Assembly: GCA_002269645.1 (NCBI GenBank)
Contig: NIVC01000006.1
Location: forward strand, 744,001 to 808,000
Direction of reading: 5' to 3'
DNA: 64,000 bases
From: Macrostomum lignano
Lineage: Eukaryota
Within the stretch, counting starts at the first letter, position 1. The number at the start of each line of letters is the position of its first letter. This document shows positions 12,129 through 48,410 of the stretch, in pieces. The position numbers and the translations under genes are program-made. The notes beneath the pieces are model-generated. The model saw only the letters and a list, made by a program, of their open reading frames with translations. It was not told the DNA's origin and made no database searches.

Positions 12129-12239
12129 CTGTTAGATAACAGCATCATCGACTGCACAGGTGACATGAATGAAATAAATAGATATATTTCTAAATATCTG
12201 CGAAATAACAATAAACAGACATGAAATCCTAAATATTTA

Positions 12240-13483: not shown

Positions 13484-14030
13484 GACTGTTGCCATATCTT
13501 AGCTAATGTTTAATCATGGACTGTTGCCATATCTTAGCTAATGTTTAATCATGGACTGTTGCCATATCTTAGCTAATGTTTAATCATGGACTGTTGCCAT
13601 ATCTTAGCTAATGTTTAATCATGGACTGTTGCCATATCTTAGCTAATGGTTAATCATGGACTGTTGCCATATCTTAGCTAATGGTTAATCATGGACTGTT
13701 GCCATATCTTAGCTAATGGTTAATCATGGACTGTTGCCATATCTTAGCTAATGGTTAACCATGGACTGTTGCCATATCTTAGCTAATGGTTAATCATGGA
13801 CTGTTGCCATATCTTAGCTAATGGTTAATCACGGACTGTTGCCATATCTTAGCTAATGGTTAACCATGGACGGTTGCCATATCTTAGCTAATGGTTAATC
13901 ACGGACTGTTGCCATATCTTAGCTAATGGTTAACCATGGACTGTTGCCATATCTTAGCTACATGTAATGGTTAATCATGGACTGTTGCCATATCTTAGCT
14001 AATGGTTAATCATGGACGGCTTCTATATCT
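13484..14030. repeat. 35-bp satellite, ~15 copies
   Basis: ggactgttgccatatcttagctaatg(t/g)ttaatcat. Confidence 0.95.
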
Positions 14031-14232
14031 TAGCCTAATGGTAATTTAGGTAGTACTATACGCAGATACAGAAGTAATACAGCATATGATAGACAATCTA
14101 TTAACTTCTAACACATAAGAAATCAACTATATAAATATGCTATTGATATTGTGGAACGTTAGTAACACGCGCAAACGAGGGAAGACAAAAATCTACTCGT
14201 CAGTAGTTGAACAGTTAAAAGTCGCACTCGTA

Positions 14233-14301
14233 CTACTTAGAGTAGTTGCGCTCGCCAAATATTGTACTGCCGACGCGTACATTTGTACTGCCCATTTTTA
14301 T
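14233..14301 (-). CDS. PLPBP: Pyridoxal phosphate homeostasis protein, exon 3 (last)
   Basis: Acceptor ttttag|ATA; IKMGSTNVRVGSTIFGERNYSK* carries the YggS/PROSC C-terminal GSTxVRVGSTIFG motif (too short for the ORF track). Confidence 0.92.
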   Translation of the reverse strand: MKMGSTNVRVGSTIFGERNYSK

Positions 14302-14421
14302 CTAAAATTTTAATTGAGGAAAATTAAATACGCAAAATATTCAAATGACACTACTGACAATCTAACCGATAAGTAGAAAGTAAGACTTTGTTTTTAAAAT
14401 AAAAATAAAAATCAAACTCAC

Positions 14422-14691
14422 GGCCAATTCAAAATCGGACGACATGCCCATGCTCAGCTCCAGCTGCTCCTCGCCGCCAAGTTTCAATGCCGCGGTGAGC
14501 TCGCGGCGGCACAAAACCAGCCGTTCAAAATCCGCGTTGCCATCCTCAGCTTGATGCGAAGCTTCCAACGAACCAATTGTCATGAGGCCGGCTAGGCTAA
14601 TTGCCGGGCAATTTTCTAGCAAGTGGCCGGCCAAACCGACCACTTGGTTGGGCTGGCAGCCGTACTTCTGCTCCTCGTTGCTTGTGTTCAC
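14422..14691 (-). CDS. PLPBP: Pyridoxal phosphate homeostasis protein, exon 2
   Basis: VNTSNEEQKYG...LAGLMTIG...LELSMGMSSDFELA; acceptor tatccag, donor GCC|GTGAGT, both phase 0. Confidence 0.92.
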
Positions 14692-14709
14692 CTGGATACA
14701 CGTTGGAGG

Positions 14710-15030
14710 TTAGGGTAGAGGCGAGTGAGAGTACTTTAGGGGTAGAGGGGAACGAATGTACATTATTAGGGGTAGAGGGGAATGAATGTACATTATTAGG
14801 GGTAGAGGGGAATGACTGTACATTGTTAGGGGTAGAATGGAATGAATGTACATTATTAGGGGTACGAAAATTGAAGGCTCAGTGTACATTAATGGGTAGA
14901 ATAGTGGGGCTGAGTGTTCATGTAGATTAATGGGGGAAGAAATTTTGGGGGCCGAGTGTACATAGGGGGTAGGGGGAAATGAGTGTACATCAAGAGGTAG
15001 GAGCAGCGGAGTTTGCGTGTACATTAGGGG
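14710..15030. repeat. 30-bp degenerate intronic minisatellite
   Basis: ggggtagaggggaatgaatgtacattatta. Confidence 0.85.
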
Positions 15031-15207
15031 GTAGAAATAGAAAAAGTGCAGGAGTTGAGTGAGTGTGCGTATGTGGGGTTGAGGTGTAGGTTGGGATCAG
15101 GATCAGATTGGGATGAGATGTAGGTTGTTAACAGACGTTAATTTTACTATAAACAACTAAAAAAATGCTGAATAAAGCTAATCCGTCACACTGAGCACAT
15201 GTCTCAC

Positions 15208-15639
15208 CTGAATAAACACTCTCAATTTGCTACCTGACTCATAGGCGGAGGTCTTGGTCCACTCTTTGTGCAGCAGATTTGCTAATTTTTCAGAATCTAC
15301 CGTTTCCATAGTATCCAAATTGTTAACCTGGGATAAACGTTTCACATTCTTTGACTGACAATGACCGATAAAATGCCAGCGAATGTCCGGGCACTGCGAC
15401 TGGATCTCGGGGCTGTGGGATTTCTCGTACAATTCTTGAACATAGTTCTCGCCAAAGTGCCTCTGGCCAGCCGAGTAGGCGGCTACAATATCGGATATCG
15501 GCTTGGTTTTCGACACGGCAACCAAGCGAGGGAGCTGCTTGGCCGAGCCGCCCGAAGCTGCGGCAGCCGCGCTAGCGATTCGCTGGAGCACGGACTGAAG
15601 ACGGGAGGCAACCTCGGTGCCGCCAGTGACCACGGACAT
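15208..15639 (-). CDS. PLPBP: Pyridoxal phosphate homeostasis protein (YggS/PROSC family), exon 1
   Basis: LVAVSKTKP (PLP lysine), FGENYVQE, WHFIGHCQSKNVK, ETVDSEKLA; ATG 15639; donor CAG|GTGAGA; spliced product 256 aa. Confidence 0.93.
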
Positions 15640-15664
15640 TTCTTGCTGCTGTGGCTGAAATACC

Positions 15665-16375
15665 AAAGATACCCCCAGCAGTGGAATATAGATACCCACA
15701 GTAGCGGAATATAGATACCCACACCCTGGAATATAGATACCCACAACCCTGGAATATAGATACCCACAGCAGCGGAATATAGATACACACAGCACTGGAA
15801 TATAGGTACCCACAGCAGTGGAATATAGATACCCACAACATGGAGTGTAGATACCCACAGCACTGGGATATATACCCACAGTACAGGAATATAGATACCC
15901 ACAGTACAGGAATATAGATACCCACAGCACAGGAATACAGATACCCACAGTACAGGAATATAGATACCCACAGTACAGGAATATAGATACCTACAACACT
16001 CGAATATAGATACCCACAGCACAGGAATATAGATACCCACAGTACAGGAATATAGATACCCATAACACTCGAATATAGATACCCACAACACTCGAATATA
16101 GATACCCACAACACTCGAATATAGATACCCACAACACTCGAATATAGATACCCACAACACTCGAATATAGATACCCACAACACTCGAATATAGATACCCA
16201 CAACACTCGAATATAGATACCCACAACACTCGAATATAGATACCCACAACAATGGGATATAGATACCCACAGCACAGGAATATAGATACCTACAACATTC
16301 GAATATAGATACCCACAGCACTGGGATATAGATACCCACAACACTCAAATATAGATACCCACAGCAGCATCTTAG
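15665..16375. repeat. 22-bp satellite abutting the PLPBP 5' acceptor
   Basis: ggaatatagatacccaca(g/a)cac repeated. Confidence 0.95.
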
Positions 16376-17189
16376 CACATAAATCATAGCTCATAAATCA
16401 AGATAGCTTAATAAGCCAGCTAAAACTGTTACATAATCAGATCAAATTATCACATAAAAAAGACACCACTAATCCATGGCAAAATTCAGTGCATATTTTA
16501 TCTACAAATCCTTTTTTATACACGCGGCCTTTTAAAACACAAAAATAATGCTTGCGAACATCAGTGTAAAAAAACAATAATGGAAACAAATAAAAAGTGT
16601 GCTAATGCGTAATATCGCAGATAAAAGTAACTGAGCAAGTGCAGTACATGTACTTCTAACTAATTCGCTTAGATCATAAAAATGAAGGTGACACAGTGGT
16701 AAAAAATAATCAGCCACATCAGATTTGCATTGGTGTGTCAGGGAGTTTGAGAGGATTAAATAATAATATTTTTCCTTTTAGATTTACAACCATTGCGCGT
16801 GAAATTTTATTAATTATTTCGAAGTGTTGTTATTATACTACTAAAAATATTATGTGCATAATATATACAGTAAAATTATCTTTTGTACAAAGATTACAGC
16901 AACAATGTGGACAGAATTGCCATAACGCTGCGATCTGCGGAATCTCACAGAAAAAAATATGGGAATCTCAATTAACAAAGGAGAATACCTAAAAAACAAG
17001 ATGCATCTCATAACGAAGGAAATTCTTTGCAGCAAATTATAATTTTCACGACAAGGGGGACCTCAAAACAAAGAATCGCACATGAAAAGGAATCCTCGAA
17101 CGATAGGAAATCTCAAATTCATGATGGCAAACTTCAGAGCAAGGGAATCTTAAAGCAACGGAGAATCACACAGCATAGAGAATTTCAGC

Positions 17190-17680
17190 AATGGGGAATC
17201 TCAAAACAAGGGAAATCTCACATCGAGGGAACCCTAAGGCAAGGGGAATTTTCAAACAAGGGGAATCCCAAGACAAGGGGAATCTCAAAACAAGGGGAAT
17301 TTCTAAACAAGGGAAATCCCAAGACAAGGGGAATTTCCAAACAAGGGGAATCTCAAAGCAAGAAAATTTCCAACCAAGGGGAATCTCAAGACAAGGGGAA
17401 TTTCCGAACAAAGGGGAATCTCAAAGCAATGGGAATTTCTAAACAAGGGGAATCTAAAGACAAGGGGAATCTCAAAACAAGGGGATTTCCAAAAAGTGGA
17501 ATCTCAAAACAAGGGAATTTCCAAACAAGGGGACTCTCAAAACAAGGGGAATTTCCAAACAAGGGGACTCTCAAAACAAGGGGGATTTCCAAAAAGTGGA
17601 ATCTCAAAACAAGGGAATTTCCAAACAAGGGGACTCTCAAAACAAGGGGAATCTCAAAACAAGGGGAATCTCAAAACAAT
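17190..17680. repeat. ~19-bp degenerate satellite (aaacaaggggaatctcaa-like)
   Basis: Tandem repetition. Confidence 0.85.
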
Positions 17681-18270: not shown

Positions 18271-18419
18271 GGCTTTCAGTTATTACTGTTTGAGTAGTGA
18301 TTTTAAGTCTGCGACGCAGTTGCGCGTGGTAGTTTGAGAAACCTCATGCAAGATTATTAGCATGAACTCAAGTTTGCATTGTTTGTAAATCAATTATCAG
18401 ATCCACTTGTTCATCCGTC

Positions 18420-19122
18420 TCTCTGTCAGTCTGTCTGCCCGTCTGCCTGTCTGTCTGCCTGTGTCTGTCTGTCTGGCTGGCTATCTATCTATCTATCTGT
18501 ATGTCTCTCTGTCTGTCTGCATGCCTGTCTGTCTGCCCGTCTGCCTGTCTGTCTGCCTGTGTCTGTCTGTCTGGCTGGCTATCTATCTATCTATCTGTAT
18601 GTCTCTCTGTCTGTCTGCATGCCTGTCTGTCTGCCCGTCTGCCTGTCTGTCTGCCTGTGTCTGTCTGTCTGGCTGGCTATCTATCTATCTATCTGTATGT
18701 CTCTCTGTCTGTCTGCATGCCTGTCTGTCTGCCCGTCTGCCTGTCTGTCTGCCTGTGTCTGTCTGTCTGGCTGGCTATCTATCTATATATCTGTATGTCT
18801 CTCTGTCTGTCTGCATGCCTGTCTGTCTGCCCGTCTGCCTGTCTGTCTGCCTGTGTCTGTCTGTCTGGCTGGCTATCTATCTATCTATCTATCTGTATGT
18901 CTATCTGTCTGTCTGCATGCCTGTCTGTCTGCCCGTCTGTCTATCTGCCCGTTTTTTTATGTCTGCCTATTTGTCTGTCTGCCTGTCTGTCTGGCTATCC
19001 ATCTGTCTGTCTGTTTGTCTGTCTTGCTCCCTTTCTCCCTCCCTCCCTATCTGTCTGTCTGCCTGTCTGTCTGTCTGTCTGTCTGTCTGCCTGTCTGTCT
19101 GTCTGCTGTCTGTCTGTCTGCC

Positions 19123-19155
<33 letters not shown>

Positions 19156-19225
19156 GCTGTCTGTCTGCCTGTCTGTCTGCTGTCTGACTGTCTGTCTGCT
19201 GTCTGTCTGCCTGCCTGCCTGCTTG
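18420..19225. repeat. (CTGT)n/(CTAT)n compound microsatellite with higher-order periodicity
   Basis: Tandem tetranucleotide blocks. Confidence 0.95.
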
Positions 19226-19534: not shown

Positions 19535-20584
19535 CACAGGTACTAGAATAGCTACGCTTTCGTCTATTTTTTCAGTTTCATGATTAACATTTTTTGTTAT
19601 TTTATTTGCTAAAATAAAAAAACAATACATTTTACAACTTACTTTAATTTTTGAAGCTGATAACAAACAGACCCACTTAATTGGCAACTTTAACTTGAAA
19701 AAAGTTGAAAGTTGCAAAACCTGAAAATCCAGTGCGTGCATACCAAACAAGCGAGAAAAGGGTGGGCCCCAGCCCCCAGCCAGTCCGATAAACAGTTAGG
19801 CTTTCCTCTTGCCCCGCTGGTGTCTGACTCTCCTTACTGCTCTCTCATTGGCTGAGCTAGATTGGGCCTGCGCCCTAGGTTGAGTTTCGTCCGTCTGACT
19901 TTGACCTCTCTCCTTACTGCTCTCTCATTGGCTGAGCTAGATTGGGCCTGCGCCCTAGGTTGAGTTTCGTCCGTCTGACTTTGACCTCTCTCCTTACTGC
20001 TCTCTCATTGGCTGAGCTAGATTGGGCCTGCGCCCTAGGTTAAGTTTCGTCCGTCTGACTTTGACCTCTCTCCTTACTGCTCTCTCATTGGCTGAGCTAG
20101 ATTGGGCCTGCGCCCTAGGTTGAGTTTCGTCCGTCTGACTTTGACCTCTCTCCTTACTGCTCTCTCATTGGCTGAGCTAGATTGGGCCTGCGCCCTAGGT
20201 TGAGTTTCGTCCGTCTGACTTTGACCTCTCTCCTTACTGCTCTCTCATTGGCTGAGCTAGATTGGGCCTGCGCCCTAGGTTGAGTTTCGTCCGTCTGACT
20301 TTGACCTCTCTCGTTACTGCTCTCTCATTGGCTGAGCTAGATTGGGCCTGCCCCCTAGGCTGAGTTTTGTCCGCCTTGCGTTCACTTGTGTAAATCGAGT
20401 TAAATGCTTGTTGTTCATTTTAACCCCCTATGCTCCTGAGGCTTTTAAATCCCGAGGCAAAGAAATATTAGCTACCACATTAAATTAGAGTAACGCTGAG
20501 CAGACCAACTAATGACAAAAGAGTAGATAGTTCTAATTTTTCACAACTTTAATTGCGAGTGGTACAATCAATCTAGTATTTATA
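19535..20584 (-). mobile_element. Non-autonomous TIR element (copy B), CACAG terminus, 8-bp TSD, ~7 x 80-bp internal array
   Basis: CACAGGTACTAGAATAGCTA at 19535, degenerate inverse CTAGTATTTATA ending 20584, flanked by ATTGACAC at 19527-19534 and 20585-20592. Confidence 0.75.
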
Positions 20585-20605: not shown

Positions 20606-21305
20606 TTAGGCCTGGGAAAACTCCACTACAGTTTGAACAAAACTATCGAAATCTTCAGAGACGACTTTAGCCGACTTCTTAGCATTGATAATTTGGCACA
20701 ATAACTCTGGTATTGGAGGAGCGGATGCTTGAACTGAGTCGCTATGCTCGGACAGCAGTTCGCCAGTGAGACGCAGCACCAACAGTTGAAGGTCGCCAAT
20801 ACCATCTTCATCATCATCATCAGCATCCTCGGCAATATTCGAATCGAATTCATTCGGCGAACAGCTGACAATATGACGCAACGAATTGACAATCAAAGCC
20901 TGAGCTACAGAGCAGCTAGGCGTAGGACTCAAATTCAATAACAGGCTTAGCCTCAGAGAGGCGAGGCCAAGCACTAGAATGGACAAGAAGTTGTTGGCAC
21001 ACAAACGATTATTTCCAGAGCCAATTGAAACAGTCAGATAGTCTGTCAGACTAGCTATCATGTCAGTCAGTTGTTGGCCATCAAAGCACAAGTTGGAGGC
21101 GTCCTCTTCAGCCGAGTGCATCTGACCCAGAGTGAGGTTCAGCAGCACATTCGCCAGAGGAGACAGGGCGCTGGACGATGAGGCAGCAAGTTGACGAGCG
21201 AGACAGTCAGACATCAGGTAGCGAACTAACTGGCGACTACTCTTGCGAAGAAGCTCGACGCCATCGTCTGAGGAGGTGAGGGTGCACAGGTAGGGCAGGG
21301 CGGCT
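20606..21305 (-). CDS. NCDN: Neurochondrin, last exon
   Basis: Acceptor cccgcag|A, phase 2; AALPYLCTLTSSDDGVELL resembles NCDN LLLPGWCHLTVEDGPREIL; TAA at 20606. Confidence 0.75.
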
Positions 21306-21492
21306 CTGCGGGAGGTTCAATAAGCATGTCTGAGGTTATAGTCTAGTGATAATATGATTTATGATTTAGATCTATTTTAGATCTATGATTTATGATTTAT
21401 TAATAAATCTTCATGGATAGCAACCCCATTTTAATTTTTTATCCTTAATTGAGCACTTGCAGATCATCACATATCTACATAGACTGAGTTAC

Positions 21493-23105
21493 CTGGCAAC
21501 GTCATCAGCATCCTCAGAATCCACGGCATCGTTCGGTCCTTCAGCTCCCATCAGCCAGCCAAGCAGCTGTACAAACGCGCCCCGCTTACGACAGCTCTTG
21601 CTGTTGAATTCATCATCATTGCCCACCCGTTCGCGAATCTGTTCGGCAAGTTCATCGCCTTCGCTCAGCCACAGGCAGAGGCAGCGGGAGCAGGCGGCCA
21701 AGAACAGTCGCTGAGGCCGATTCGAACCAGCGTAAGCAGCTGTCAGCGGCGATTTCATAACTGCAGAAGCTCCAGCAACAAGACGATCCAATAGAAGATC
21801 AAAAGCGTCGCTGAGACGAGTAAGTAATCGCTCAAAATAATCCGGTCGTTGATCGGCGCCACGGTCCGATTGCTGCTGCTCCAACAATCGGCGAATAGTT
21901 TCTTCTAGTAGAACGAAACAAGCGCCAAGAGTTTCGCGATGCTGCGAACTCGCGATTACAAGTTCAAATGCTCGGTCGCTTTCGTCCGCAAGATTTAATC
22001 GGACATCAACTTCCAAAGCGGCCAACGAGCCGATCAGGTAGAGCAGCTCCGATTCGGCCACTGCACCAGAGCTCGCCTTGCTATCAACAATGTCCGCAAG
22101 ACCACGCTTGCTAGCCGAAGCTAAATTGGCTAATAGCGACAGACTGACAGCTCGAAGACTGCGGTTGCCAAGGAGACTGGGCATCAAAGGACGCAACTGC
22201 TCGGTTAGACGACCAGACGAAATTTTGACGCAGTTTGGCGTAACGTAGGACAACAGCTGACTGACGAATTCGAGGATATCCGCCGTGCCGGGTAATTGGG
22301 AATCCTCGGTCGGGGATTTCCCTTGGGATTCCCCGCTTGAGGATTTCCCTTGGGATTCCCCGGATTGGGTTTTCCCTTGGGAATCATCAGTTGGGGATTT
22401 CCCTTGGGATTCCCCACGTGAAGAGTTCCCTTGATCGGACTGCTTTGTCTTGGACAGTTCAGCTTGAAACTCTTCGACAAGCTCAGCGGTTAGGTTAGAG
22501 AGCAGCTTGTCAACAGATGGAGCCACTCGATCAAGCATGCCGGCAAAAGCGCACCGATCCAACGCCACCAGCGCTAGCCTCAGGCTGCTATCCCACTCCG
22601 GCAGCCGGTTGAGCACAGATTCCACAAGAGTTCCCACTAGCGGCGAATCTGCCAAGAACTCTCTGCACTGATCCAGCTCTAATCCACAGGCGATAAAGTA
22701 CAGCGCCTGGTGAAGCTGCTCAACAAGTTGGCGAATCTCCTCGGATTGAGCGGCAGCCGGCTGCCACCGAGCCAGGCATCGGCAGAGGCCATTCAGCAGG
22801 TCGGGGAAATCCGCCCGGCCAGCCAGTCCGGCCAAGTCTCGCTCGGCCAAGTGTCCGATAATCGAGGCCGCGGCGGAGACGTGCGCCAGCGTGTCCGCAT
22901 CGTCGCCGTCGCCCTCGCCGTCGCGGTCGACTAGAAGCAGGCGTAGCAAAAATTTGGTATCGATATGAGCAAATACTGAGCTGCTCTCGGGGGCGCTGAA
23001 TGCGGCCAGCTGACGGGCGGTGAGCAGTAGAGCGGCCACCCGGTCATTGTCTGTGCCGGCTTTGGCCAGCGCCTTAGCGCATAGAGCTGCGGCTGATTGG
23101 CGCGA
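21493..23105 (-). CDS. NCDN: Neurochondrin, large first coding exon (no ATG at start)
   Basis: ALAKAGTDNDRVAALLL..TKFLLRLL ~ NCDN ALREAKNDSEQFAALLL..FTFPNRLL; LAALEVDVRLNL..ACFVLLE..SRCLCLWLSE ~ LACVEVRLAL..ACYALME..VRILGAWLAE; acceptor ttacttttcag|TCG, donor AG|GTAACT. Confidence 0.8.
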
Positions 23106-23226
23106 CTGAAAAGTAAATTAGTAATATTTCAATATGCTGCTAAGAATCCTAATCGCACTACTTATAGCAGCATGGTCGGGAAACTCAACAGAGGTCTGCA
23201 AAAAGCCTCTCCAACCAGCCCTCGGG

Positions 23227-23890
23227 TCCTTTGAAACTTCACAATAACAATCCGGCCTGTGTCGCTTCTCCCCCTTCTCTCATCTCTCCTTTCTTGTCTC
23301 TTCTCTTCCCATTCTCTAATCTCTCTTTTCTCTCGCCCTTCTCTCTTCTCTCTCCATTCTATCTTCTCTCCTCTCTTCTCTCTCCATTCTATCTTCTCTC
23401 CTCTCTTCTCTCTTCTCTCTTCTCTCTCCATTCTATCTTCTCTCCTCTCTTCTCTCTTCTCTCCCCTCTTCTCTCATCTCTCCTTTCTTCTCTCCCATTC
23501 TCTCTTGTCTCCCCCGCCCCTTCTCTCCCCCTTTCTCTTTTGTCTCCTCTCTTCTCTCATCTCTCCCCTCTTCTCTCATCTCTCCCCTATTCTTTCTTCT
23601 CTCCCCTCTTCTCTCTTCTCTCCTCCCTTTGCTCTTTTCCTCTCTATTCGCTTCTCTCTTCTCTCCTCCCTTTATCTTCTCACTTCTCTCCCCTCTTTTC
23701 TCTCTCTCCTTATCTCTACTTCGTTTCCATCGCTCGTCTTATCTCTCAGTTCTTCGCCTCTCTCGCAATCTTACCTTTCATTGCTAATCTTCTTCTCTCC
23801 TCTATCTCCCCTTTTCCTTCCCTCACTCGCCTGGCCCACAGCCATGAGCTGGATTCTTTATCTAGCGCTTGATATAAGTCTGCCGACCCC
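23227..23890. repeat. CT-rich polypyrimidine element with conserved ends (copy 1)
   Basis: TCCTTTGAAACTTCA ... CT tract ... GCCATGAGCTGGATTCTTTATCT, same ends as 43583-45058. Confidence 0.75.
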
Positions 23891-24206
23891 TGTCACATAG
23901 CAGAGGGGTGCAAATGAAAAAAATTCACAAAAGACGTTTAAAATCGTGAATTAGCTTTAAATGTGTGCTTATTATTTAAGAAAATTCAGTGTAAAAATAT
24001 TATTAAAACTTATTATTCTGTAAATACAGAATTAGATAGAATACCGGATATGAAGCATGCAAACTATTGAAACAAAATCATTCAATGGCAATGATTTATA
24101 TATAAAAATCTGAATCTAATGGAATAATCAAACTCTTATTATAGAAATGCTTACTATTGATTCGAATAGCTCTTTACGAATAGATAACGCTCGCAATAAC
24201 TAATAT

Positions 24207-24299
24207 TTATGGTTGCTGCCGTCCGTTTTTTTGCCGCGCGTAAAGCTGCTGCAGTGCTTTCATTTGTTCCACCAATGAGGCCAATTCTGATGGTGACTT
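24207..24299 (-). CDS. GNPTG: GlcNAc-1-phosphotransferase gamma subunit, exon 4 (last)
   Basis: Acceptor ttcccag|AAG, phase 0; KSPSELASLVEQMKALQQLYARQKNGRQQP* is a coiled-coil-like tail like that of GNPTG. Confidence 0.65.
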   Translation of the reverse strand, partial: KSPSELASLVEQMKALQQLYARQKNGRQQP

Positions 24300-24314
24300 C
24301 TGGGAATGGAAAAT

Positions 24315-25050
24315 GTAATTGCTACTCATTTAGCGACTCATTTGACTACTCATTTATCTACTCATGAAGCTACTCATTTATCTACTCCTTTAGCTACTGA
24401 TTTAGCTACTGATTTAGCGACTCATTTGACTACTCATTTATCTACTCCTTTAGCTACTGATTTAGCTACTGATTTAGCGACTCATTTGACTACTCATTTA
24501 TCTACTCATTAAGCTACTCATTTATCTACTCCTTTAGCTACTCCTTTAGCTACTGATTTAGCGACTCATTTGACTACTCATTTATCTACTCATTAAGCTA
24601 CTCATTTATCTACTCATTTATCTACTCATTTATCTACTCCTTTAGCTACTGATTTAGCAACTCATTTGACTACTCATTTATCTACTCATTTATCTACTCC
24701 TTTAGCTACTCATTTAGCGACTCATTTGACTACTCATTTATCTACTCATGAAGCTACTCATTTAGCGACTCATTTGACTACTCATTTATCTACTCCTTTA
24801 GCTACTCAGTTATCTACTTATTTAGCTACTCTGTTATCTACATATTTAGCTACTCAGTTATCTACTCATAAAGCCACTCAGTTATCTACTCATATAGCTA
24901 GTCAGCTATCTACTTATTTAGCTACTCAGTTATCTACTTGTTTATCTACTCATTTATCTACTCATTTAGCTACTCATTTAGCTACTTATATATCTATTTA
25001 GTTATCTATTATCTACTCATTTATCTACTCATTTAGCTACTCATTTAGCA
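24315..25050. repeat. 12-bp intronic satellite (ctactcatttag/ctactcatttat)
   Basis: Tandem repetition. Confidence 0.93.
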
Positions 25051-25081
25051 ACTAACTAATAAAAGGAAGGGCTAAGCTTAC

Positions 25082-25240
25082 TGTATACGCTTCAACAGAC
25101 GCTTCAGTGAAAGCAGCTGATACTACTAACTCAGTAGAATAAGCAGGTGTTGCAGATGATTTCACTTGATTAGGAAATTTTCGAGTGTCAGAAAGCAGGC
25201 CAACTCTAAATATTAAATTGTCCAACAGCAATTCGTAACT
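25082..25240 (-). CDS. GNPTG: GlcNAc-1-phosphotransferase gamma subunit, exon 3
   Basis: SYELLLDNLIFRVGLL ~ GNPTG GHEKLLRTLFEDAGYL; acceptor attgcag, donor ACA|GTAAGC, 159 nt, phase 0/0. Confidence 0.75.
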
Positions 25241-25969
25241 CTGCAATGGGAAAATAGGGGAAACCGTGAGAGAGGGGATCAAAAGAAAACGGGGAAATGA
25301 AACAGAAGAAATGAGGATTAAGAAATTTCCATTTTACAACGGTCAAGGCCAAAGGCAGACAGGAAGGAAGGAGAGAGACTGACTGTTAGCAAGCAGAACA
25401 GTCAAGTGAAGCAAAAATGAGGCAATTATCTCCTACATCAAGTTGAGCATGCTGAATTTCCTTCCGTTGTGGGGAAATTACTAATTTTATCATAATCGAT
25501 TAGATAGAAACTCGGTTGACCTTACTACCAGTAAGGGGAATTATTACTTTTAATAATATGACATATGAAGTCTTACATGCACTTAAGCCAAGTATTAAAG
25601 CAAATTAATAAACAGCAAGGAAATTTCGGGTTTAAAGAGCAATCTAGTTGCTAGGGTAGCTTCAATATGCCTAGAATAGAATTAGATCTCATATTTCGTT
25701 GCCCCGTGTAGCCATCAATAGAAACAACAGCTTTGGTAACTCAGTAATGTAATCTGTCAAATTCTTCCCATTGTGCACAGAAAACAGCTATATGCCGATT
25801 TCCTAACATTGCGCGCTATTTAACAATAGTTTAAATGGGGACGGGGCAAGGACTAGCTGCCTCATGATGGTATATGAGGGGACTCTGTGTGAACGTCTGT
25901 ATGAGTGCGTGCGTGCCGATAGTATTGGCGCTTCTATGTGCTCAGGAGTCAGCGGAATGACCTACCGGA

Positions 25970-26290
25970 AAGATCTATGACCTACCAGTACCAGAAGATC
26001 TATGACCTACCAGTACCAGAAGATCTATGACCTACCAGTACCAGAAGATCTATGACCTACCAGTACCATAAGATCTATGACCTACCAGTACCAGAAGATC
26101 TATGACCTACCAGTACCAGAAGATCTATGTCCTACTAGTACCATAAGATCTATGACCTACCAGACCTACCAGTACCATAAGATCTATGACCTACCAGACC
26201 TACCAGTACCAGAAGATCTATGAACTACCAGTACCAGAAGATCTATGAACTACCAGTACCAGAAGATCTATGTATGAAACACCAGGAAGA
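25970..26290. repeat. 25-bp minisatellite aagatctatgacctaccagtaccag, decaying to ~26500
   Basis: Tandem repetition. Confidence 0.9.
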
Positions 26291-26650
26291 CATATGACTT
26301 ATCAGAAAGGTTGGTCTATGACATATCAGACAAGTTTATGAACTACGAGAAGAATCTATGACCTACAATCAAGATTTTTGACCTACCAGAAAGGTCGGAA
26401 CTACCAAAAAGGTAGGTCTTTGAGCTATCAGAAAGGTATATGAACTAACAGGAAGAATGGAAAATCTATGAACTTCCAGAAAGGTCTATGACCTACCTTA
26501 AGAAAGAAGGAAAAATCTTTGTCCCTGAGAAATTTACTCAAATAAGGTAATTCATAAGAACTGAAGAAAGAATGACTTCAAGAAAATATTTTTTCGTTTT
26601 AACTTTTAATTAAAGAATTCGCATAATTTCGGTCCCTTGCTTATATTGGC

Positions 26651-26680
26651 TGCCCCGAAAGGGGGGCACTGGATTGCTAG
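26651..26680 (+). mobile_element. Putative Helitron 3' terminus (GC hairpin + CTAG|T)
   Basis: TGCCCC-gaaagg-GGGGCA hairpin at 26651-26668 followed by CTAG at 26677-26680 and T; 5' end not located. Confidence 0.4.
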
Positions 26681-27104
26681 TCCATATACTATAAATGGTC
26701 TTATCTAAAAATTGGAATTACTAACAAAAAACTACAATAAACAAACTCTAGGAAAGAAAACAGCAAGACACGTGCTTGAAGCGGACTTGACCTTTAACTG
26801 CACTGCGAAGTTTTAACCGGTTAGACAATAATTTTTTAATACTAGAGCAAAATGTAACGAAAATATTTGGTTGGACCAATTATTGGAAACTACAACTACA
26901 CTACGACTACGACTACAAGTATTCTTCTACATGCACTCCTCGAAGTTTATTTAATATAAACAGTTCCTCTTAAGCTCCAGTCAGCCTGAATTTTATGCAA
27001 AAATAAATTTCCTCGTTCTTGTAAGAGTACCCTGAGGAATTCCCCTCTGAGCGTTTTAATGTCAAAAAGATTAAAAATATTTCCCTGAAATCCTAAATTC
27101 ATAG

Positions 27105-27330
27105 GGGAATTGCTGAGATGTCAAGGCTCACGGGGAGGGGGAATTGCTGAGATGTCAAGGCTAACTGGGGAAATTGCTGAGATGTCAAGGCTCACGGGGA
27201 GGGGGAATTGCTGAGATGTCAAGGCTCACGGGGAGGGGGAATTGCTGAGATGTCAAGGCTAACTGGGGAAATTGCTGAGATGTCAAGGCTAACTGGGGAA
27301 ATTGCTGAGATGTCAAGGCTAACGAGGAGA
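27105..27330. repeat. 30-35-bp minisatellite (ggaattgctgagatgtcaaggct...)
   Basis: Tandem repetition. Confidence 0.88.
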
Positions 27331-27585
27331 ATTGCTGGGACGTCGAGGCTCATGTGGGTTTCTCACATGCCTTGAGCCACAGCTCATAGAGGATCTGCAT
27401 CTGATATCGTAGGCTAGACTTCCCTTAAGAGATTAACACTAGCGAACGTACAAGGTCAAAGAAACCAACATGCAGTTGATTAAAAAACATTCTTGCCTCC
27501 CCAACCCCAACAGGAGAGCCAAGAAGGCTAACTTAGTAACAAAATTTTTAGATACTCTCCTGAGAAGTTCCTCAACAACACTTAC

Positions 27586-27910
27586 CGATGCATTCAGCAG
27601 TCCCCGATGCCTCATAGTGTACAGAGCATCCCAAACTGAACGCTGCCGCTCAGTCAGTGACGGATAAACCTGCATAGACTTCGAACCCGTCACGGACTGA
27701 CATGCCAGCGGTGTCTCTAGCAACATTTTGTACTGACAGACTGGAGACTCGACCACTGAGGCCAGCCGAGTGGCCCTGGAGCAGGCCAATTCGACTAGAG
27801 TTCGTCTCGAATCGCGTCCGTGGCCGCAGGGCACGCCGTTTGGCATTGCCATGGCAACTAGGCGGCTTTCGTTGGCGCCACTGTGATCCACGAGCCAGCC
27901 GTCCCACACT
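27586..27910 (-). CDS. GNPTG: GlcNAc-1-phosphotransferase gamma subunit, exon 2 (MRH domain)
   Basis: VWDGW..GVPCG..RRTLVELACSRATRLASVVESPVCQYKMLLETPLAC..MQVYPSL..WD ~ GNPTG [52 protein letters not shown]; donor TCG|GTAAGT. Confidence 0.88.
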
Positions 27911-28094
27911 CTGGGGAATAAGATGGATTAGGGATTCTTGACAGATGCTTGAGATGGGGATCTGGGGAATAAGGCGTCTGTGATTGGGACCTGGGGAATC
28001 AGATGTCTCAGATGGGGATCTGCATCTGGGGAATCAGGTGCCTTAATAGGAATTTGAAGAATCAGATGCCTGAAATGGGGACTGGGGTAATCAG

Positions 28095-28540
28095 AGGCGT
28101 GACGTGTAGGGAATCAGAGGCCTGGTATCTAGGGAATTAGAGGTCTGATATCTAGGGAATCAGAGGCCTGACATCTAGGGAATCAGAGGCCTGATATCTA
28201 GGGAATTAGAGGTCTGATATCTAGGGAATCAGAGGCCTGACATCTAGGGAATCAGAGGCCTGACATCTAAGGAATCAGAGGCCTGGTATCTAGGGAATTA
28301 GAGGTCTGATATCTAGGGAATCAGAGGCCTGACATCTAGGGAATCAGAGGCCTGAAATCTAGGGAATTAGAGGCCTGATATCTAGGGAATCAGAGGCCTG
28401 ACATCTAGGGAATCAGAGGCCTGATATCTGGGGAACCAGAGGCCTGACATCTAGGGAATCAGAGGCCTGATATCTAGGGAATCAAAGGCCTGATATCTAG
28501 GGAATCAGAGGCCTGACACCTAGGGAATCAGAAGCCTAAG
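28095..28540. repeat. 23-bp intronic satellite tctagggaatcagaggcctgata
   Basis: Tandem repetition. Confidence 0.93.
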
Positions 28541-28578
28541 AGAACACAGACACAAGAGAATCAGTAGTCAATAATCAC

Positions 28579-28967
28579 CCAATAACACCATGAAAGCCAT
28601 CTAAAGCGCGATAGACCACATCGCGCTGAGTAGCATTGTCAAATGGGCACAGTGTATACTCATACTGCGCCCCAACTTGAGTTGAATAGCATCGACCAAA
28701 AAGACCAGAGATAAGTCTAGCTGGACCACTAGGAGGCTTAGCTGTTACAGGCTTCTTCGGTTGTTGTGGTCGCTGCTGCTGCTGCTGTTGTTGTTGTTGT
28801 TGAAAATAATTATGCGGCGAATCAAGAACTTTTATTGGTACTTGATGATTTGCAGCTGCCAGTTCATTGTGCAACTGCATAGGCAACATTGCAAAAGCTG
28901 AGCTGGTAATACAATGAAGCACAAAGTTGACTACCATAACAGTAGTGCACAGCACAAACTTTATCAT
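28579..28967 (-). CDS. GNPTG: GlcNAc-1-phosphotransferase gamma subunit, exon 1
   Basis: Signal peptide, poly-Q linker, SGPARLISGLFGRCY..YEYTLCPFDNATQ ~ SGPVHLFRLSGKCF..YKYEFCPFHNVTQ; donor GG|GTGATT, phase 2; spliced product 321 aa. Confidence 0.88.
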
Positions 28968-34265: not shown

Positions 34266-35237
34266 CGAGGGTCATCCCAAAAGTTTCAGCAATCGAATGA
34301 TTTTGTGCCATAGACAACTTTTAGGACTACAGCACTTATACCACACGAAAGATGAGCATATTTTGGGTGTCTGAGTAAGTTTTTAGCATTCTAGCTGCAA
34401 AATTCTGTTTTCTAAAGAACATTTTGTGAGATACTAAATCGAACATCGGCCGACGACGATAAAATGGAATTTCCGTCGAACTTGGAGCAGCGCTCATACA
34501 TTAAAAAGGAATGTCTTCGTGGTGTCCCTGCAGCTCAAATTCACTGTCAGTTGCTGCAGGCCCATATATGGGCCAAATGCGATGAGCCAGCGAGCCGTGT
34601 ACGACTGGTACAGTCGATTCAAGAATGGCCGCTCTGATGTCGAGGATGATGTCGAGTACGAGGAAGGCCAAAAGAAGCTCGGACAGAGTTGAACATCGAG
34701 TTTGATCCTAGGGCTGCTGAACATCGATCGCCGTTGGACATGCGAAGAAATGGCTGAGTCGTCTGGAATCCCCTCGTCGAGCTTCATTATTCACCATCTT
34801 CGACCTGCCTTGGGCAAAAAGCGGCCACAGACCCTGGAACTTGGTCCACTCCTTCTGCACGACAATGCCAGTTCGCACACAGCCCGCATTGTGCAGGACC
34901 TACTGCGGGACTACCAGTGGGAGGTGCTGCCTCATCCTCCTTACTTCCCAGACCTCAGTCCCTGCGATTTCGACCTTTTTCCGAAGCTTAAGAACCAGCT
35001 CCGAGGGCGTCGTTTCCATTGCCCTGATGACCTGTTCAGCGAGGTCGGCCGCATTGCAAAAGACCTGTGCGAGTCCGGCGCTGCTGACGGCGTTCAGAAG
35101 TTGCCTGGGCGCTGGGAGCGCACAATTCAAGTCAACGGAAGTTATTTTGAAGGTTTTTGACATGTTTAATTCATTGTTCTGACACTCGTTTGTTGAAAAT
35201 TAATAGGCGTTTGCTGAAACTTTTGGGATGACCCTCG
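34266..35237 (+). mobile_element. Internally deleted mariner (DD34D) element
   Basis: TIR CGAGGGTCATCCCAAAAGTTTCAGCAA at both ends with TA TSDs; ORF remnants MEFPSNLEQRSYIK.., HDNASSH, HPPYFPDLSPCDF; WVP/TGDE region missing. Confidence 0.92.
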
Positions 35238-37658: not shown

Positions 37659-37932
37659 CATGCGCAACAGTTGGCCGATCTGGCCGACCGATTTGGCAGC
37701 CCACCAAGGAAGTTGCAAAAATGCCCACCCAAAAAACAGTAGTAGTACTAAGTAGCTGACGAGGCATTTTGCTTAATAAGACAGTCATAGTTACTCCTGC
37801 CGTTTACCTAAAGTTGCGGTAATTTTTCTTCATTGTTTTTTTACATGTAAGTCGCATTTTTGGCCTAAAACTATGTCGCATTTTTGTTAAAACTAAGTCG
37901 CACAGCCGACCGAATTTTAGAGGTTGCGCATG
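37659..37932. mobile_element. 274-bp MITE with TA TSD
   Basis: TA|CATGCGCAAC ... GTTGCGCATG|TA; partial second copy of its right end at ~42545-42615. Confidence 0.7.
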
Positions 37933-37934
37933 TA

Positions 37935-39360
37935 TGATGCCAATAAAGTCTTCATGCACTTGTAAATCTGGCTTTGAAACCCACCGAATGCACACTGACA
38001 TTTGTTCCTTGCAGCTTACGTCATGTGATTCATCAGCAATCAATGCGAATGTTGTTGACTTCTCACTAATGTCAAGTAACAAATTCAGAGAACCTGATAT
38101 GCCATGATTTCCATTATCTCTCCAATCACATCAACACTCAAGTACTTAGAATCCTTTAGCCAAGATTGCAGTTCAGGCACATCTTCAGACCTTAAAATAA
38201 GCAGCTATCTAAGATTGCCTTCAATCTCCTAACTATTTCTTATTGCCATTCCTTGACGCATAAGATATCACAATGAGCTAAAAACCCACTGCAGATTTTC
38301 CCAATTTTGTAATAGCTGTTGAGAATGAATAGCATCTAATTGTGCTCCTATTGTAGATTGTAATTTCAGTCAAGTGTACACCTTCTCGTAGGCTTCTTAG
38401 TGAAAATGACTGTTATTATGTTTCTTTAGCTTTTCAATTGCTTTCTTCCAGTCACAAAAGCCGCGAGAGGTGAATGTACTCTCTCCACAACTTCTTGATA
38501 GCTTCATGCCTGAGTTTAACGCAAAGCAACAATAAAAACAAAAAAAGGTGCCTTGAGATAAGCAGTATGTAAGCCAGTCAAACTGCACAAACCATTGTAG
38601 TTGGCATGATCGACTTGCATTGCAATCTAGCAGTATCCGCAGTCTAACATTTCGCATGGATTAGATGTGCTAGTGCTAAGAATGGTATTTTTTGCTGCAG
38701 ATATAGCAGTCTCACCAACATCAGCATTGGCAATAGCGGCAGGGGCAGTAGGCTCTCTAGAGTCAGCATTGGCAGCAGCGGCAGGGGCAATAGAGTCAAC
38801 ATTGGCAGCGGCAGGGGCAGTAGAGTCAGCATTGGCAGTGGCAAGGGCAGTAGAGTCAGCATTGGCAGTGGCAAGGGCAGTAGAGTCAGCATTGGCAGTG
38901 GCAGGGGCAGTAGAATCAGCATTGGCAGTGGCAAGGGCAGTAGAGTCAGCATTGGCAGTGGCAAGGGCAGTAGAGTCAGCATTGGCAGTGGCAAGGGCAG
39001 TAGAGTCAGCATTGGCGGTGGCAAGGGCAGTAGAATCAGCATTGGCAGTGGCAGGGGTAGTAGAGTCAGCATTGGCAGCAGCAGCAGGGGCAGTAAGCTC
39101 TCTCGAGTCAGCTTCAGTAGCAGCAGCTGTGCCAGATGGAGCATTCGAGTTAGCTTCAATGGGAGAAACAAGCCTAAAAACAGCAATTAACAAGCAGCAT
39201 ACAGCTTAATATCAACACAGTAGCATATCTTCATAGCCTACATTTAGATTACGTATTTACCAGTTAGTCATTTTCCTTGACTTTTTGGCTGCCTGTACAG
39301 CCTGTTTTATATCCTCTTCATGTTGTTTCTTTCTCCTTTTAGCCATTGGCATTTTATTTT
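37935..39360 (-). pseudogene. Decayed hAT-superfamily (ZMYM1-like) transposase
   Basis: FALIADESHDVSCKEQMSVCIRWV...EDFIG (hAT ADESxD motif), GFCDWKKAIEKLKKHNNSHFH, N-terminal MAKRRKKQHEED; multiple stops and frameshifts. Confidence 0.75.
38690..39100. repeat. 30-bp minisatellite (ATANADSTAL in frame on minus strand) within the hAT remnant
   Basis: gcagtagagtcagcattggcagtggcaagg repeated. Confidence 0.9.
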
Positions 39361-47134: not shown

Positions 47135-47423
47135 TACCACAATCATATAACAAACTGTTAAAACTGTGAATATTTGATTTAGCAATAGCCAGAAGTTGGG
47201 TTGAAATAGAAAAGATATAGTCCAGTGTAGGCTGTAACATTTTATTGCCTGCATTACTTTTACCCACTAAAATTAGTTAATTATATAGCTTTTAAGTTGT
47301 AATGTATTTATGCATCTACAATTATATCAAAATGTAACGCATGAACTTATATAAATTGCAAGTAAAATTGTTGCTTAAGTGCTTCAAAGAGTTGGTTGCT
47401 AGGCAGACTCAGAAGTAGAGGTC

Positions 47424-47945
47424 ATGACCTCGAGTCTGTTTCACCATGGCGGCTATCAGTCTCTGGATGGAGACACTGGCCTTGGTGGCGCAGCTGGCAT
47501 GCCCAGCATCGACTTTCACGAAGAAGAGATTGCATTTTCATCCGAGGAGACTTCGCTAGATCCCCGAGATCAATCGCACAGATTTGAACACATTCAAAAT
47601 CTTGACGACTTCTTCACTAGAGTTTATCGCTATCATCAGCGCGGCGGTTTCGTGTGCATGGCACTCGAAGAGCTGTTCCAGCTGTTCCAGTTGGCTTTTG
47701 TTGTCATTTTTTCAACCTTCTTGATGGAGTGCGTTAACTATACAGTGCTGTTTCGCAATGCTATGACTAATGGAACAAAGACTAGGCTATCCGAGGCCGT
47801 TATTAATCCGCAGTATTGCGCCGCCCACCTCAGCGGTTGGGTCGTGTTCGCTGTGATTGTGTCCATATTTGTCTGGCTAGCTAAGTTTGCCAAAGTGTCT
47901 TATAATCTTATCAAGTATTGGGAAACTCGAGGCTTTTATACACAG
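47424..47945 (+). CDS. ATG9: Autophagy-related protein 9, exon 1
   Basis: FEHIQNLDDFFTRVYRYHQRGGFVCMALEELFQLFQLAFVVIFSTFLMECVNY is the ATG9 N-terminal signature; donor CAG|GTAAAT. Confidence 0.93.
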
Positions 47946-48009
47946 GTAAATTTCATTCTTGCTTTGGTTTTTGACTGGTTGCTGGTGGCGGCAGTCATAT
48001 AAAGTCAAA

Positions 48010-48300: not shown

Positions 48301-48410
48301 TTCTCAAGAGATTGTAAATAAAAAACTTGTGAATATTTTCTGCTTACAAAATATACTACTAGAATTAAGTAGTAACAGACTGCTAACTTGCACTCATTCG
48401 CTTGCCCCAG

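What the first reader, a model, noticed from the sequence alone, without database searches (positions are those of the whole stretch)
23039..23120. Neurochondrin lacks a genomic start codon: Met probably donated by a spliced-leader 3' AUG
Seen: the 1.6-kb exon begins at a strong acceptor (taatttacttttcag|TCG CGC CAA) exactly in phase 0. An in-frame TAA lies just upstream, and the next in-frame ATG is about 200 codons inside the conserved fold. The first residues (SRQSAAALCAKALAKAGTDNDRVAALLL) align to the very N-terminal helix of NCDN. The nearest upstream donor (23161 region) would bring a stop codon. Established: flatworm spliced leaders end in AUG, and that AUG has been shown to act as an initiator Met. 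Inference: SL-AUG + TCG gives MSRQSAAAL..., a 771-aa protein whose translation depends on trans-splicing. The PLPBP acceptor (15654) is also in frame with its ATG, so an SL-AUG would add MPQQQE. Alternative: micro-exon ATGAAAG|GTAAGA at 23775-23781 spliced to a weaker downstream AG would give MKAAAL.
Basis: partly seen in the sequence, partly recalled or inferred. Interest (0 to 1): 0.8.

Follow-up and report, generated by a model that had tools for sequence, protein, structure and literature searches.

The report
Neurochondrin start codon from spliced leader
In the flatworm Macrostomum lignano the neurochondrin gene has no start codon of its own; its mRNA is on record as trans-spliced and the AUG ending the spliced leader lands in frame, which is a solid but ordinary example of a flatworm mechanism known since 2006.

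Summary
On the minus strand a strong acceptor (TACTAAT..TTTCAG|TCG, first exon base 23105) opens a 1613-nt exon in phase 0. An in-frame TAA lies 15 nt upstream. The first in-frame genomic ATG is codon 190.

The window is Macrostomum lignano (assembly Mlig_3_7). GenBank protein PAA94605.1 (Mlig010458.g2, "partial", 770 aa) starts exactly at that S. A published table flags this gene and its paralog as TRANSSPLICED. The published 35-nt spliced leader (SL) of M. lignano ends in ATG, its only ATG. SL + exon therefore reads MSRQSAAAL…, 771 aa.

Pfam aligns residue 9 to Neurochondrin profile position 9. A third, more diverged paralog keeps the acceptor and frame, with 100% identity in the first 160 exon nt against 86% in the 160 nt upstream.

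Trans-splicing at this site is documented, indirectly here. Initiation at the SL AUG is inferred; I found no read, ribosome-profiling or peptide evidence. The mechanism is already known from Schistosoma (Cheng 2006) and Echinococcus, so interest is modest.

Side finding: the assembly carries SL-like "CATG" in place of acceptor "TCAG" at two neighbouring trans-splice sites. This is probably an artefact of polishing the assembly with RNA-seq reads.

The parts
23106..23123 (-). 3' splice (trans-splice) acceptor: branch-point-like TACTAAT (23123-23117), pyrimidine tract, TTTCAG (23111-23106)
   Evidence: Read directly. It matches the M. lignano trans-acceptor motif [T/C]TNCAG (PMC8629364). It is conserved in all three paralogs.
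23118..23120 (-). In-frame TAA 15 nt upstream of the exon. It closes the frame, so no genomic ATG can be contiguous with the ORF.
21493..23105 (-). Neurochondrin exon 1 (1613 nt), phase 0 from its first base (TCG = Ser). The annotated CDS of PAA94605.1 starts here.
   Evidence: L002 position 10001 equals window 23105.
22536..22538 (-). First in-frame genomic ATG (codon 190). Five out-of-frame ATGs precede it, at 23082, 23047, 22900, 22792 and 22779.
22296..22433 (-). In-frame 27-nt coding repeat (GESQGKS-type). It lies between the two Pfam-matched parts and is expanded by about 72 aa in the third paralog.
21306..21492 (-). Intron 1 (GTAACT...CCGCAG), 187 nt
20606..21305 (-). Neurochondrin exon 2, coding part, ending in TAA (20608-20606)
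23124..24259 (-). Outron / intergenic region between the stop of the upstream same-strand PRKCSH_1-domain gene (TGA 24262-24260) and the acceptor. It contains a GA-rich simple repeat at 23267-23717.
23775..23781 (-). It is not annotated, and its donor is GT->AT in the third paralog.
15208..15654 (-). PLPBP exon 1. The acceptor ggtatttcag|CCACAG is in frame with the genomic ATG at 15639-15637, and the annotated CDS range starts at 15654.

Best explanation
The window is Macrostomum lignano. Its neurochondrin gene (Mlig010458.g2) lies about 1.15 kb downstream of a same-strand PRKCSH_1-domain gene. Its pre-mRNA is SL trans-spliced at the acceptor 23107-23106. The 35-nt spliced leader ends in AUG, its only AUG. 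Joining it to TCG puts that AUG in phase 0, so the mature mRNA starts ...UUAUUGC-AUG-UCG-CGC-CAA and encodes MSRQSAAALCAK..., 771 aa. The genome therefore encodes no initiator codon for this protein, and translation of the full-length protein depends on trans-splicing.

Shown:
- the geometry of acceptor, frame and stop;
- the organism and the SL sequence;
- the published trans-spliced status;
- a CDS annotated as 5'-partial starting exactly at the acceptor;
- N-terminal homology starting at the acceptor;
- a conservation step at the acceptor across three paralogs.

Inferred: that ribosomes actually initiate at the SL AUG.
For: 1. Sequence. An in-frame TAA lies 15 nt upstream. The frame is open from base 1 of the exon. 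The first in-frame ATG is codon 190 and five out-of-frame ATGs precede it.
2. Identity. The only hit among 1.84 billion representative proteins is NCBI PAA94605.1, 'BOX15_Mlig010458g2, partial [Macrostomum lignano]', 770 aa, starting SRQSAAAL. The paralog PAA70053.1 has the same start. The annotated CDS range is window 23105..20606.
3. Published annotation. 'Mlig010458.g2 {TRANSSPLICED} {Pfam: Neurochondrin}' and 'Mlig021282.g2 {TRANSSPLICED}' appear in PMC5816591 Suppl. Table 2. The TBONE pipeline cuts transcripts at SL-read peaks and TransDecoder calls the ORFs (PMC5730564).
4. The SL is CGGTCTCTTACTGCGAAGACTCAATTTATTGCATG, with a GTAAG donor directly after it. The trans-acceptor motif is [T/C]TNCAG and this site reads TTTCAG (PMC8629364).
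5. Pfam Neurochondrin aligns protein residues 9-212 to profile positions 9-199, so nothing conserved is missing upstream. Starting at M190 would delete about 180 profile positions.
6. The third paralog (L003, NIVC01000166.1) has an identical acceptor and frame and no in-frame ATG in the 132-nt upstream open stretch. Identity is 100% over the first 160 exon nt and 98.6% over codons 1-189, against 86% over the 160 nt upstream (Fisher p 1.3e-9).
7. Precedent. SL AUG works as initiator in Schistosoma, where more than 40 cDNAs need it (Cheng 2006, cited in PMC9851317). It is required for conserved N-termini in E. granulosus (PMC3510090). [quoted passage not shown]
Against: - I saw no read, cDNA, ribosome-profiling or peptide evidence. 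No protein starting MSRQ... is in the 15-billion-protein collection.
- The 'TRANSSPLICED' flag does not itself give the coordinate. The coordinate is inferred from the GenBank CDS start.
- SL reads were multi-mapped among near-identical paralogs, so which copy is expressed is unknown.
- The AUG context in the SL (U at -3, U at +4) is weak by vertebrate Kozak rules (my own knowledge).
- A check of transcript length against poly(A) signal was inconclusive.
- Differences between paralogs in codons 1-189 are too few (5 non-synonymous, 3 synonymous) to show purifying selection by dN/dS.
Confidence: 0.8

Rival explanations
1. The mRNA is trans-spliced, but the SL AUG is skipped or unused. Translation then starts at the first in-frame genomic AUG (codon 190) or at a near-cognate codon (for example CUG at codon 13 or GUG at codon 23), giving a shorter protein.
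For: The SL AUG sits only 32 nt from a trimethylguanosine cap and in a weak context (my own knowledge). In E. granulosus not every in-frame SL AUG is thought to be used (PMC3510090).
Against: Five out-of-frame AUGs lie between the SL AUG and M190 and would capture scanning ribosomes. Codons 1-189 are open, 98.6-100% conserved between diverged paralogs, and match Neurochondrin profile positions 9-199. In E. granulosus the doubtful cases have another AUG within a few codons; here there is none.
Confidence: 0.08
2. A cis-spliced upstream exon supplies the ATG in some or all transcripts. Candidates are the micro-exon ATGAAAG|GTAAGA (23781-23775) spliced to the internal AG at 23093, or an exon of the upstream gene.
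For: The micro-exon and the internal AG exist. Parasitic flatworms often share acceptors between cis- and trans-splicing (PMC12582326). The enumeration found 150 ATG...GT segments upstream, one with a good donor at 27586.
Against: No such exon is annotated. The GenBank CDS is 5'-partial and starts at the acceptor in both annotated copies. The micro-exon lies in a GA-rich repeat and its donor is AT in the third paralog. The 27852-27586 segment is an MRH/PRKCSH_1 exon of the neighbouring gene. Sequence conservation stops at the acceptor.
Confidence: 0.07
3. Assembly or annotation artefact: the true genome has an ATG here that was lost, or the gene model is truncated.
For: Mlig_3_7 was polished with RNA-seq reads. 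I found two neighbouring acceptors overwritten by SL-like bases, so local errors at 5' ends do occur.
Against: Three independently assembled paralogous contigs all read TTTCAG|TCGCGCC. The known artefact would add an ATG, not remove one. Pfam shows no missing N-terminal segment.
Confidence: 0.02

Closest known systems
Schistosoma mansoni / S. japonicum mRNAs that use the SL 3'-terminal AUG as initiator Met (Cheng, Cohen, Ndegwa & Davis 2006, J Biol Chem 281:733; seen only as cited in PMC9851317, PMC3510090 and PMC12582326)
   Same: The flatworm SL ends in AUG. The acceptor is in phase 0. No other AUG can give the conserved N-terminus, so the full-length protein requires trans-splicing.
   Different: The species is a free-living macrostomorphan and the SL sequence is different. 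Here there is no experimental test of initiation. As far as I could find in the searched literature, this gene (neurochondrin) has not been named as such a case.
Echinococcus granulosus SL-bearing cDNAs whose conserved N-terminus needs the SL AUG (PMC3510090)
   Same: The argument has the same form: in-frame SL ATG plus N-terminal correspondence to orthologues.
   Different: That study had cDNA sequences containing the SL. Here the junction is inferred from the genome annotation.
slORFs: ORFs created by SL addition in nematodes, Oikopleura and trypanosomes (slORFfinder, PMC9851317)
   Same: The start codon is contributed by the leader.
   Different: Those are mostly near-cognate starts and often alternative or novel ORFs. 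Here it is a canonical AUG starting the main conserved ORF.
Neurochondrin / norbin family (Pfam PF05536)
   Same: The score is above the gathering threshold and coverage runs from profile positions 9 to 511 in two stretches.
   Different: The protein is very divergent. There were no phmmer hits outside M. lignano at E<=0.001 and no PDB relative, and the authors classed it as 'non-conserved'. It carries an inserted GESQGKS repeat.

Membership tests
Flatworm mRNAs initiated at the SL 3'-terminal AUG (Cheng et al. 2006 class) | The organism's spliced leader ends in AUG immediately before the SL donor | tested here: met
   The M. lignano SL is ...TTATTGCATG, followed by GTAAG in the SL RNA gene (PMC8629364). 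ATG occurs only at SL positions 33-35. The organism was identified through PAA94605.1.
Flatworm mRNAs initiated at the SL 3'-terminal AUG (Cheng et al. 2006 class) | The mRNA is SL trans-spliced at the acceptor in question | tested here: met
   The evidence is indirect. The gene is flagged {TRANSSPLICED} in PMC5816591 Table S2. The GenBank 5'-partial CDS starts at the first base after the AG. The pipeline cuts transcripts at SL-read peaks. I did not see junction reads.
Flatworm mRNAs initiated at the SL 3'-terminal AUG (Cheng et al. 2006 class) | The SL AUG is in frame with the main ORF with no intervening stop | tested here: met
   SL + exon translates to MSRQSAAALCAKALAKAGTD.... The ORF runs 770 codons to TAA.
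Flatworm mRNAs initiated at the SL 3'-terminal AUG (Cheng et al. 2006 class) | No genomic AUG can give the conserved N-terminus | tested here: met
   An upstream in-frame TAA closes the frame. The first in-frame ATG is codon 190. The Pfam profile starts at residue 9. The same holds in the third paralog.
Flatworm mRNAs initiated at the SL 3'-terminal AUG (Cheng et al. 2006 class) | Initiation at the SL AUG demonstrated (reporter, N-terminal peptide or ribosome profiling) | not testable with these tools
   No expression, proteomic or Ribo-seq data were reachable. Exact and homology look-ups for MSRQ... found nothing.
Neurochondrin (Pfam PF05536) | Whole-protein score above Pfam's gathering cut-off | tested here: met
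   62 bits against a cut-off of 22, E 4.9e-17. The N-terminal 225 aa alone score 23.7 bits against 22.
Downstream gene of an M. lignano operon (criterion of Ustyantsev & Berezikov 2021) | Same-strand upstream gene with a repeat-adjusted intergenic distance under 1 kb, and the downstream gene trans-spliced | tested here: inconclusive
   The upstream PRKCSH_1 gene stops at 24260 and the acceptor is at 23106, a distance of 1154 nt. About 450 nt of this is simple repeat (23267-23717), leaving roughly 700 nt. Co-transcription, the upstream poly(A) site and the meaning of the '.g2' suffix were not established.

The most novel reading that the evidence does not exclude
The SL-like 'CATG' that replaces the acceptor 'TCAG' at two neighbouring trans-splice sites might not be a polishing artefact. 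The two sites are window 12167-12164 and the PLPBP acceptor of paralog NIVC01001269.1. Under this reading they are real genomic events: gene conversion templated by trans-spliced mRNA or cDNA, which hard-wires the SL-donated AUG into the genome. Neurochondrin, with an intact acceptor in all three copies, would then be the unconverted, still SL-dependent state of the same evolutionary process.
Probability: 0.06. Interest if true: 0.7.

Novelty: new member of a known kind. Interest (0 to 1): 0.3.

Why it matters
For this gene the consequence is practical. The GenBank protein labelled 'partial' is almost certainly complete once the SL Met is added. Any expression construct, antibody design or knock-in for M. 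lignano neurochondrin, a gene in the published stringent neoblast signature, must supply an ATG or keep the trans-splice acceptor.

More generally, it shows that SL-AUG-dependent ORFs exist in an early-branching free-living flatworm (my own phylogenetic placement). That fits the view that the conserved 3' AUG of flatworm SLs is functional. It also suggests that many 5'-'partial' CDSs in the Mlig_3_7 annotation are really complete ORFs that start at the SL AUG.

It does not open a new mechanism. The principle was shown experimentally in schistosomes in 2006.

The side observation is a useful caution for users of this assembly: SL bases appear to be written over acceptors, so some apparent genomic start ATGs at 5' ends may come from the SL.

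Tried and rejected
- The search for homologous proteins timed out three times. It then ran twice and returned nothing, not even the window's own protein. It therefore gave no orthologues and no transcript-derived MSRQ... fragments.
- Exact look-ups found nothing in the collection for M+protein, the M190 form, GTG-start forms and single-exon ORFs. P0005 is not on record.
- No SL RNA gene or SL-like 18-mer is in the window.
- The search of solved structures found no PDB relative.
- I compared published transcript lengths (3466 and 3228 nt) with poly(A) signals to check that the transcript starts at 23105. Neither AATAAA fits, so the check is inconclusive.
- The near-identical paralog L001 gave no comparative power: the intergenic region is identical apart from a 7-nt indel, and the CDS has only 3 differences. 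The third copy, L003, was needed.
- Exon-chain enumeration to rebuild the upstream gene's protein, and so learn its locus tag, produced only junk models and was abandoned.
- A window-wide scan for SL-suffix matches showed no enrichment (19 observed against 19.3 expected). The SL imprints are therefore only recognisable by comparing paralogs at annotated 5' ends.
- Structure prediction was not run. With no diverse alignment it would not have been informative.

Full report
**1. What is in the sequence**

The feature lies on the minus strand. The sequence reads ...gaaatat**TACTAAT**ttacttttcag|TCG CGC CAA TCA GCC GCA GCT CTA TGC..., with the acceptor AG at 23107-23106 and the first exon base at 23105. 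TACTAAT (23123-23117) resembles a branch point (my own knowledge of the UACUAAC consensus).

- TTTCAG matches the published M. lignano trans-splice acceptor motif [T/C]TNCAG (PMC8629364).
- In frame with the exon, a TAA sits at 23120-23118. The four codons between it and the exon (TTT ACT TTT CAG) contain no ATG.
- The exon runs 1613 nt to a GTAACT donor (21493|21492).
- After a 187-nt intron, a second exon (21305-20606) ends in TAA.
- The spliced CDS is 2313 nt, giving 770 aa. Met residues are at positions 190, 308, 450 and further on.
- In the first 189 codons, frame 0 has no stops while the other two frames have 6 and 4.
- Five out-of-frame ATGs precede codon 190.

The only correction is that the first in-frame ATG is codon 190, not about 200.

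**2. What the gene is and where it comes from**

Pfam gives Neurochondrin (PF05536), 62 bits against a cut-off of 22.

A full HMMER scan of 1.84 billion representative proteins with exon 1 returned a single hit. It is 100% identical, 770 aa long and aligned 1-537 to 1-537. This protein is NCBI PAA94605.1, 'hypothetical protein BOX15_Mlig010458g2, partial [Macrostomum lignano]'. A second copy, PAA70053.1 (Mlig021282g2, also 'partial' and 770 aa), also starts SRQSAAAL.

The encoding contig NIVC01000006.1 of GCA_002269645.1 (Mlig_3_7) is the window itself. The annotated CDS range is exactly window 23105..20606.

The same-strand neighbours are:
- a PRKCSH_1/MRH-domain gene upstream (28967..24260, starting with a genomic ATG);
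- PLPBP downstream (15654..14233).

**3. Is it trans-spliced there?**

I could not see reads, but three independent pieces of published annotation agree.

(a) In making Mlig_RNA_3_7, SL-containing reads were trimmed and mapped. The TBONE pipeline cut transcriptional units at the resulting peaks, and TransDecoder called the ORFs (PMC5730564).

(b) Supplementary Table 2 of Grudniewska et al. [quoted passage not shown]

(c) A 5'-partial ORF that begins at the very first base after an AG means the transcript model starts at that base. If the transcript ran on upstream unspliced, the open frame would begin after the TAA (FTFQSRQ...).

The same logic can be checked on the neighbour. My model of PLPBP from its acceptor gives 261 aa starting PQQQEMSV. 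The paralog's version of exactly that sequence is NCBI PAA70051.1, 'partial'.

**4. Does the leader bring an AUG in frame?**

The single M. lignano SL is CGGTCTCTTACTGCGAAGACTCAATTTATTGCATG, followed in the SL RNA gene by the donor GTAAG (PMC8629364). Its only ATG is the terminal one. SL + exon reads ...TTGC ATG TCG CGC CAA..., which translates to MSRQSAAALCAKALAKAGTD.... The genome has CAG, not ATG, before TCG, so the Met cannot be genome-encoded.

**5. Is the N-terminus complete with only that Met?**

With Met as residue 1, Pfam aligns residues 9-212 to Neurochondrin profile positions 9-199 of 605. No conserved segment is therefore missing upstream. A start at M190 would remove about 180 profile positions.

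**6. Comparative test**

The annotated paralog (L001) is too similar to be informative. The 1.1-kb intergenic region is identical apart from a 7-nt indel, and the CDS has three differences.

While following PLPBP I found a third paralogous region (L003, NIVC01000166.1). It contains an unannotated but intact neurochondrin exon 1 of 610 codons, with an expanded GESQGKS repeat. It corresponds to UniRef A0A1I8HVD7.
- It keeps the acceptor (ctttttcag|TCGCGCC) and the frame.
- Its in-frame upstream stretch is 132 nt up to a TGA and contains no Met.
- Identity is 86.3% over the 160 nt upstream of the acceptor. It is 100% over the first 160 exon nt and 98.6% over codons 1-189 (Fisher p = 1.3e-9).

Constraint therefore begins exactly at the acceptor.

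**7. Mechanism and its status**

*Shown or documented:* organism, SL sequence, trans-spliced status, acceptor position, frame, lack of a genomic initiator, N-terminal homology and the conservation boundary.

*Inferred:* the ribosome uses the SL AUG. The inference rests on three things.
- It is the first and only AUG before five out-of-frame AUGs.
- The N-terminal 189 residues are conserved.
- There is precedent in other flatworms:
  - SL AUG initiation was shown in Schistosoma, where more than 40 cDNAs require it (Cheng et al. 2006, as summarised in PMC9851317).
  - SL AUG is needed for conserved N-termini, and this use is conserved among Neodermata (PMC3510090).
  - All reported flatworm SLs end in ATG (PMC12582326).

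Whether the gene is co-transcribed with the upstream PRKCSH_1 gene is plausible but not established. The distance is 1154 nt, or roughly 700 nt after subtracting the GA repeat at 23267-23717. That is below the 1-kb repeat-adjusted criterion of PMC8629364.

**8. Rivals**

- Downstream or near-cognate initiation: about 0.08.
- A cis-spliced ATG exon: about 0.07.
- Assembly or annotation artefact: about 0.02.

The evidence for and against each is in the Rival explanations section.

**9. Novelty and interest**

This is a well-supported new example of a known mechanism, in a species where the trans-spliced status and the 5'-partial CDS are already public. A specialist would not be surprised. I found no paper that names neurochondrin, or discusses SL-AUG-dependent ORFs specifically in M. 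lignano, within the searched library. I rate it 'new member of a known kind' with interest 0.3.

**10. Side finding worth a curator's look**

At two annotated trans-spliced 5' ends near this gene, the assembly has the SL's last bases where an acceptor should be.

- *PLPBP.* The window copy and L003 read ctttggtatttcag|CCACAG. L001 reads ctttgttatGCATg|CCACAG. All five differences in the last 9 nt change L001 to the SL base at that position.
- *The gene starting at window 12163.* The window reads atttcattCATg|TCACCTGTGCAG, but L003 reads attgaatttcag|TCACCTGTGCAG.

The Methods of Wudarski et al. state that the Canu assembly was polished with Pilon using Illumina DNA reads and RNA-seq reads mapped by STAR. 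The simplest explanation is that SL-bearing RNA-seq reads overwrote the acceptors. That would also be in-assembly evidence that ...CATG is joined at these sites.

A real cDNA-mediated conversion is not excluded, but it is unlikely. Only the last 4-5 SL bases are present, as expected from reads forced to align end to end. The neurochondrin acceptor is intact in all three copies, so this artefact does not affect the main conclusion.

Noticed in passing
window 12164-12175 (minus strand); compare L003 12753-12772: The annotated 5'-partial CDS of the next gene downstream (372 aa, no Pfam family on record) starts at 12163. It is directly preceded by atttcattCATG instead of an acceptor. The third paralog has attgaatttcag at the same place. 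The CATG equals the last four SL bases and gives an apparent in-frame 'genomic' ATG. This is probably an imprint from RNA-seq-based Pilon polishing.
   Followed up: partly
L001 17495-17504 (NIVC01001269.1), equivalent to window 15655-15664: The PLPBP acceptor ggtatttcag is replaced by gttatGCATg in this paralog. All 5 differences match the SL base at that position and the AG is destroyed. GenBank still starts the 'partial' CDS (PAA70051.1) at CCACAG.
   Followed up: partly
L003 1949-3777 and onward (NIVC01000166.1): This is a third neurochondrin paralog, not annotated in GenBank but with an intact exon-1 ORF of 610 codons. It has about 72 extra residues of GESQGKS-type repeat, a longer intron 1 and an L94M change that creates an earlier in-frame ATG. 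It matches UniRef A0A1I8HVD7.
   Followed up: partly
window 22296-22433 (minus-strand coding): A 27-nt in-frame tandem repeat encoding S/G/Q/K-rich units (GESQGKS...) is inserted between the two Pfam-matched parts of neurochondrin. Its copy number differs between paralogs.
   Followed up: partly
window 23267-23717: A 450-nt GA-rich (CTTCTCT-type) simple repeat fills much of the outron / intergenic region upstream of the neurochondrin acceptor.
   Followed up: no
window 19828-20373: There are 6.8 copies of a 98%-identical 80-nt tandem repeat in the presumed 3' UTR of neurochondrin. Copy number differs between paralogs.
   Followed up: no
PMC5816591 Suppl. Table 2, row MligTCv3c-14182.1: The neurochondrin transcript cluster is classed as 'Neoblast, stringent': depleted after irradiation and enriched in S/G2/M cells. 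It is labelled 'non-conserved' because BLAST found no human or planarian hit. Only Pfam recognises it.
   Followed up: no
window 14233-15654 (minus strand): The PLPBP product on record for this copy is 221 aa, although the same range and exon structure give 261 aa, as in the two paralogs. The cause may be an alternative isoform or a model difference.
   Followed up: no
window 24207-24262 (minus strand): The annotated stop of the upstream PRKCSH_1-domain gene differs between copies. It is TGA at 24262-24260 here, against the equivalent of TAA at 24209-24207 in the paralog, implying different last-exon frames or isoforms. In the paralog this gene's CDS is also 5'-partial and starts 1 nt after a TTACAG acceptor, so the SL AUG is out of frame there.
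   Followed up: partly
window 47403-56488 (+), with 49659-52198 (+): ATG9 exons (Pfam ATG9 profile 2-116, 116-385, 449-478) are interrupted by a P-element-like transposase ORF pair carrying THAP, Tnp_P_element and TNP-like RNaseH/GBD domains. The transposase presumably sits in an intron.
   Followed up: partly
window 57417-58148 (+), 34693-35157 (+), 37807-38130 (-): These are transposon remnants: a mariner-type Transposase_1/DDE_3 ORF, a DDE_3 fragment and a DUF4371 fragment.
   Followed up: no
window 13484-14042, 15667-16366, 17180-17679, 18417-19221, 24321-25053, 28089-28537: There are many long minisatellite arrays with periods of 35, 23, 17/67, 4/98, 12 and 23 nt between and within genes. 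They produce long spurious ORFs in six-frame listings.
   Followed up: no
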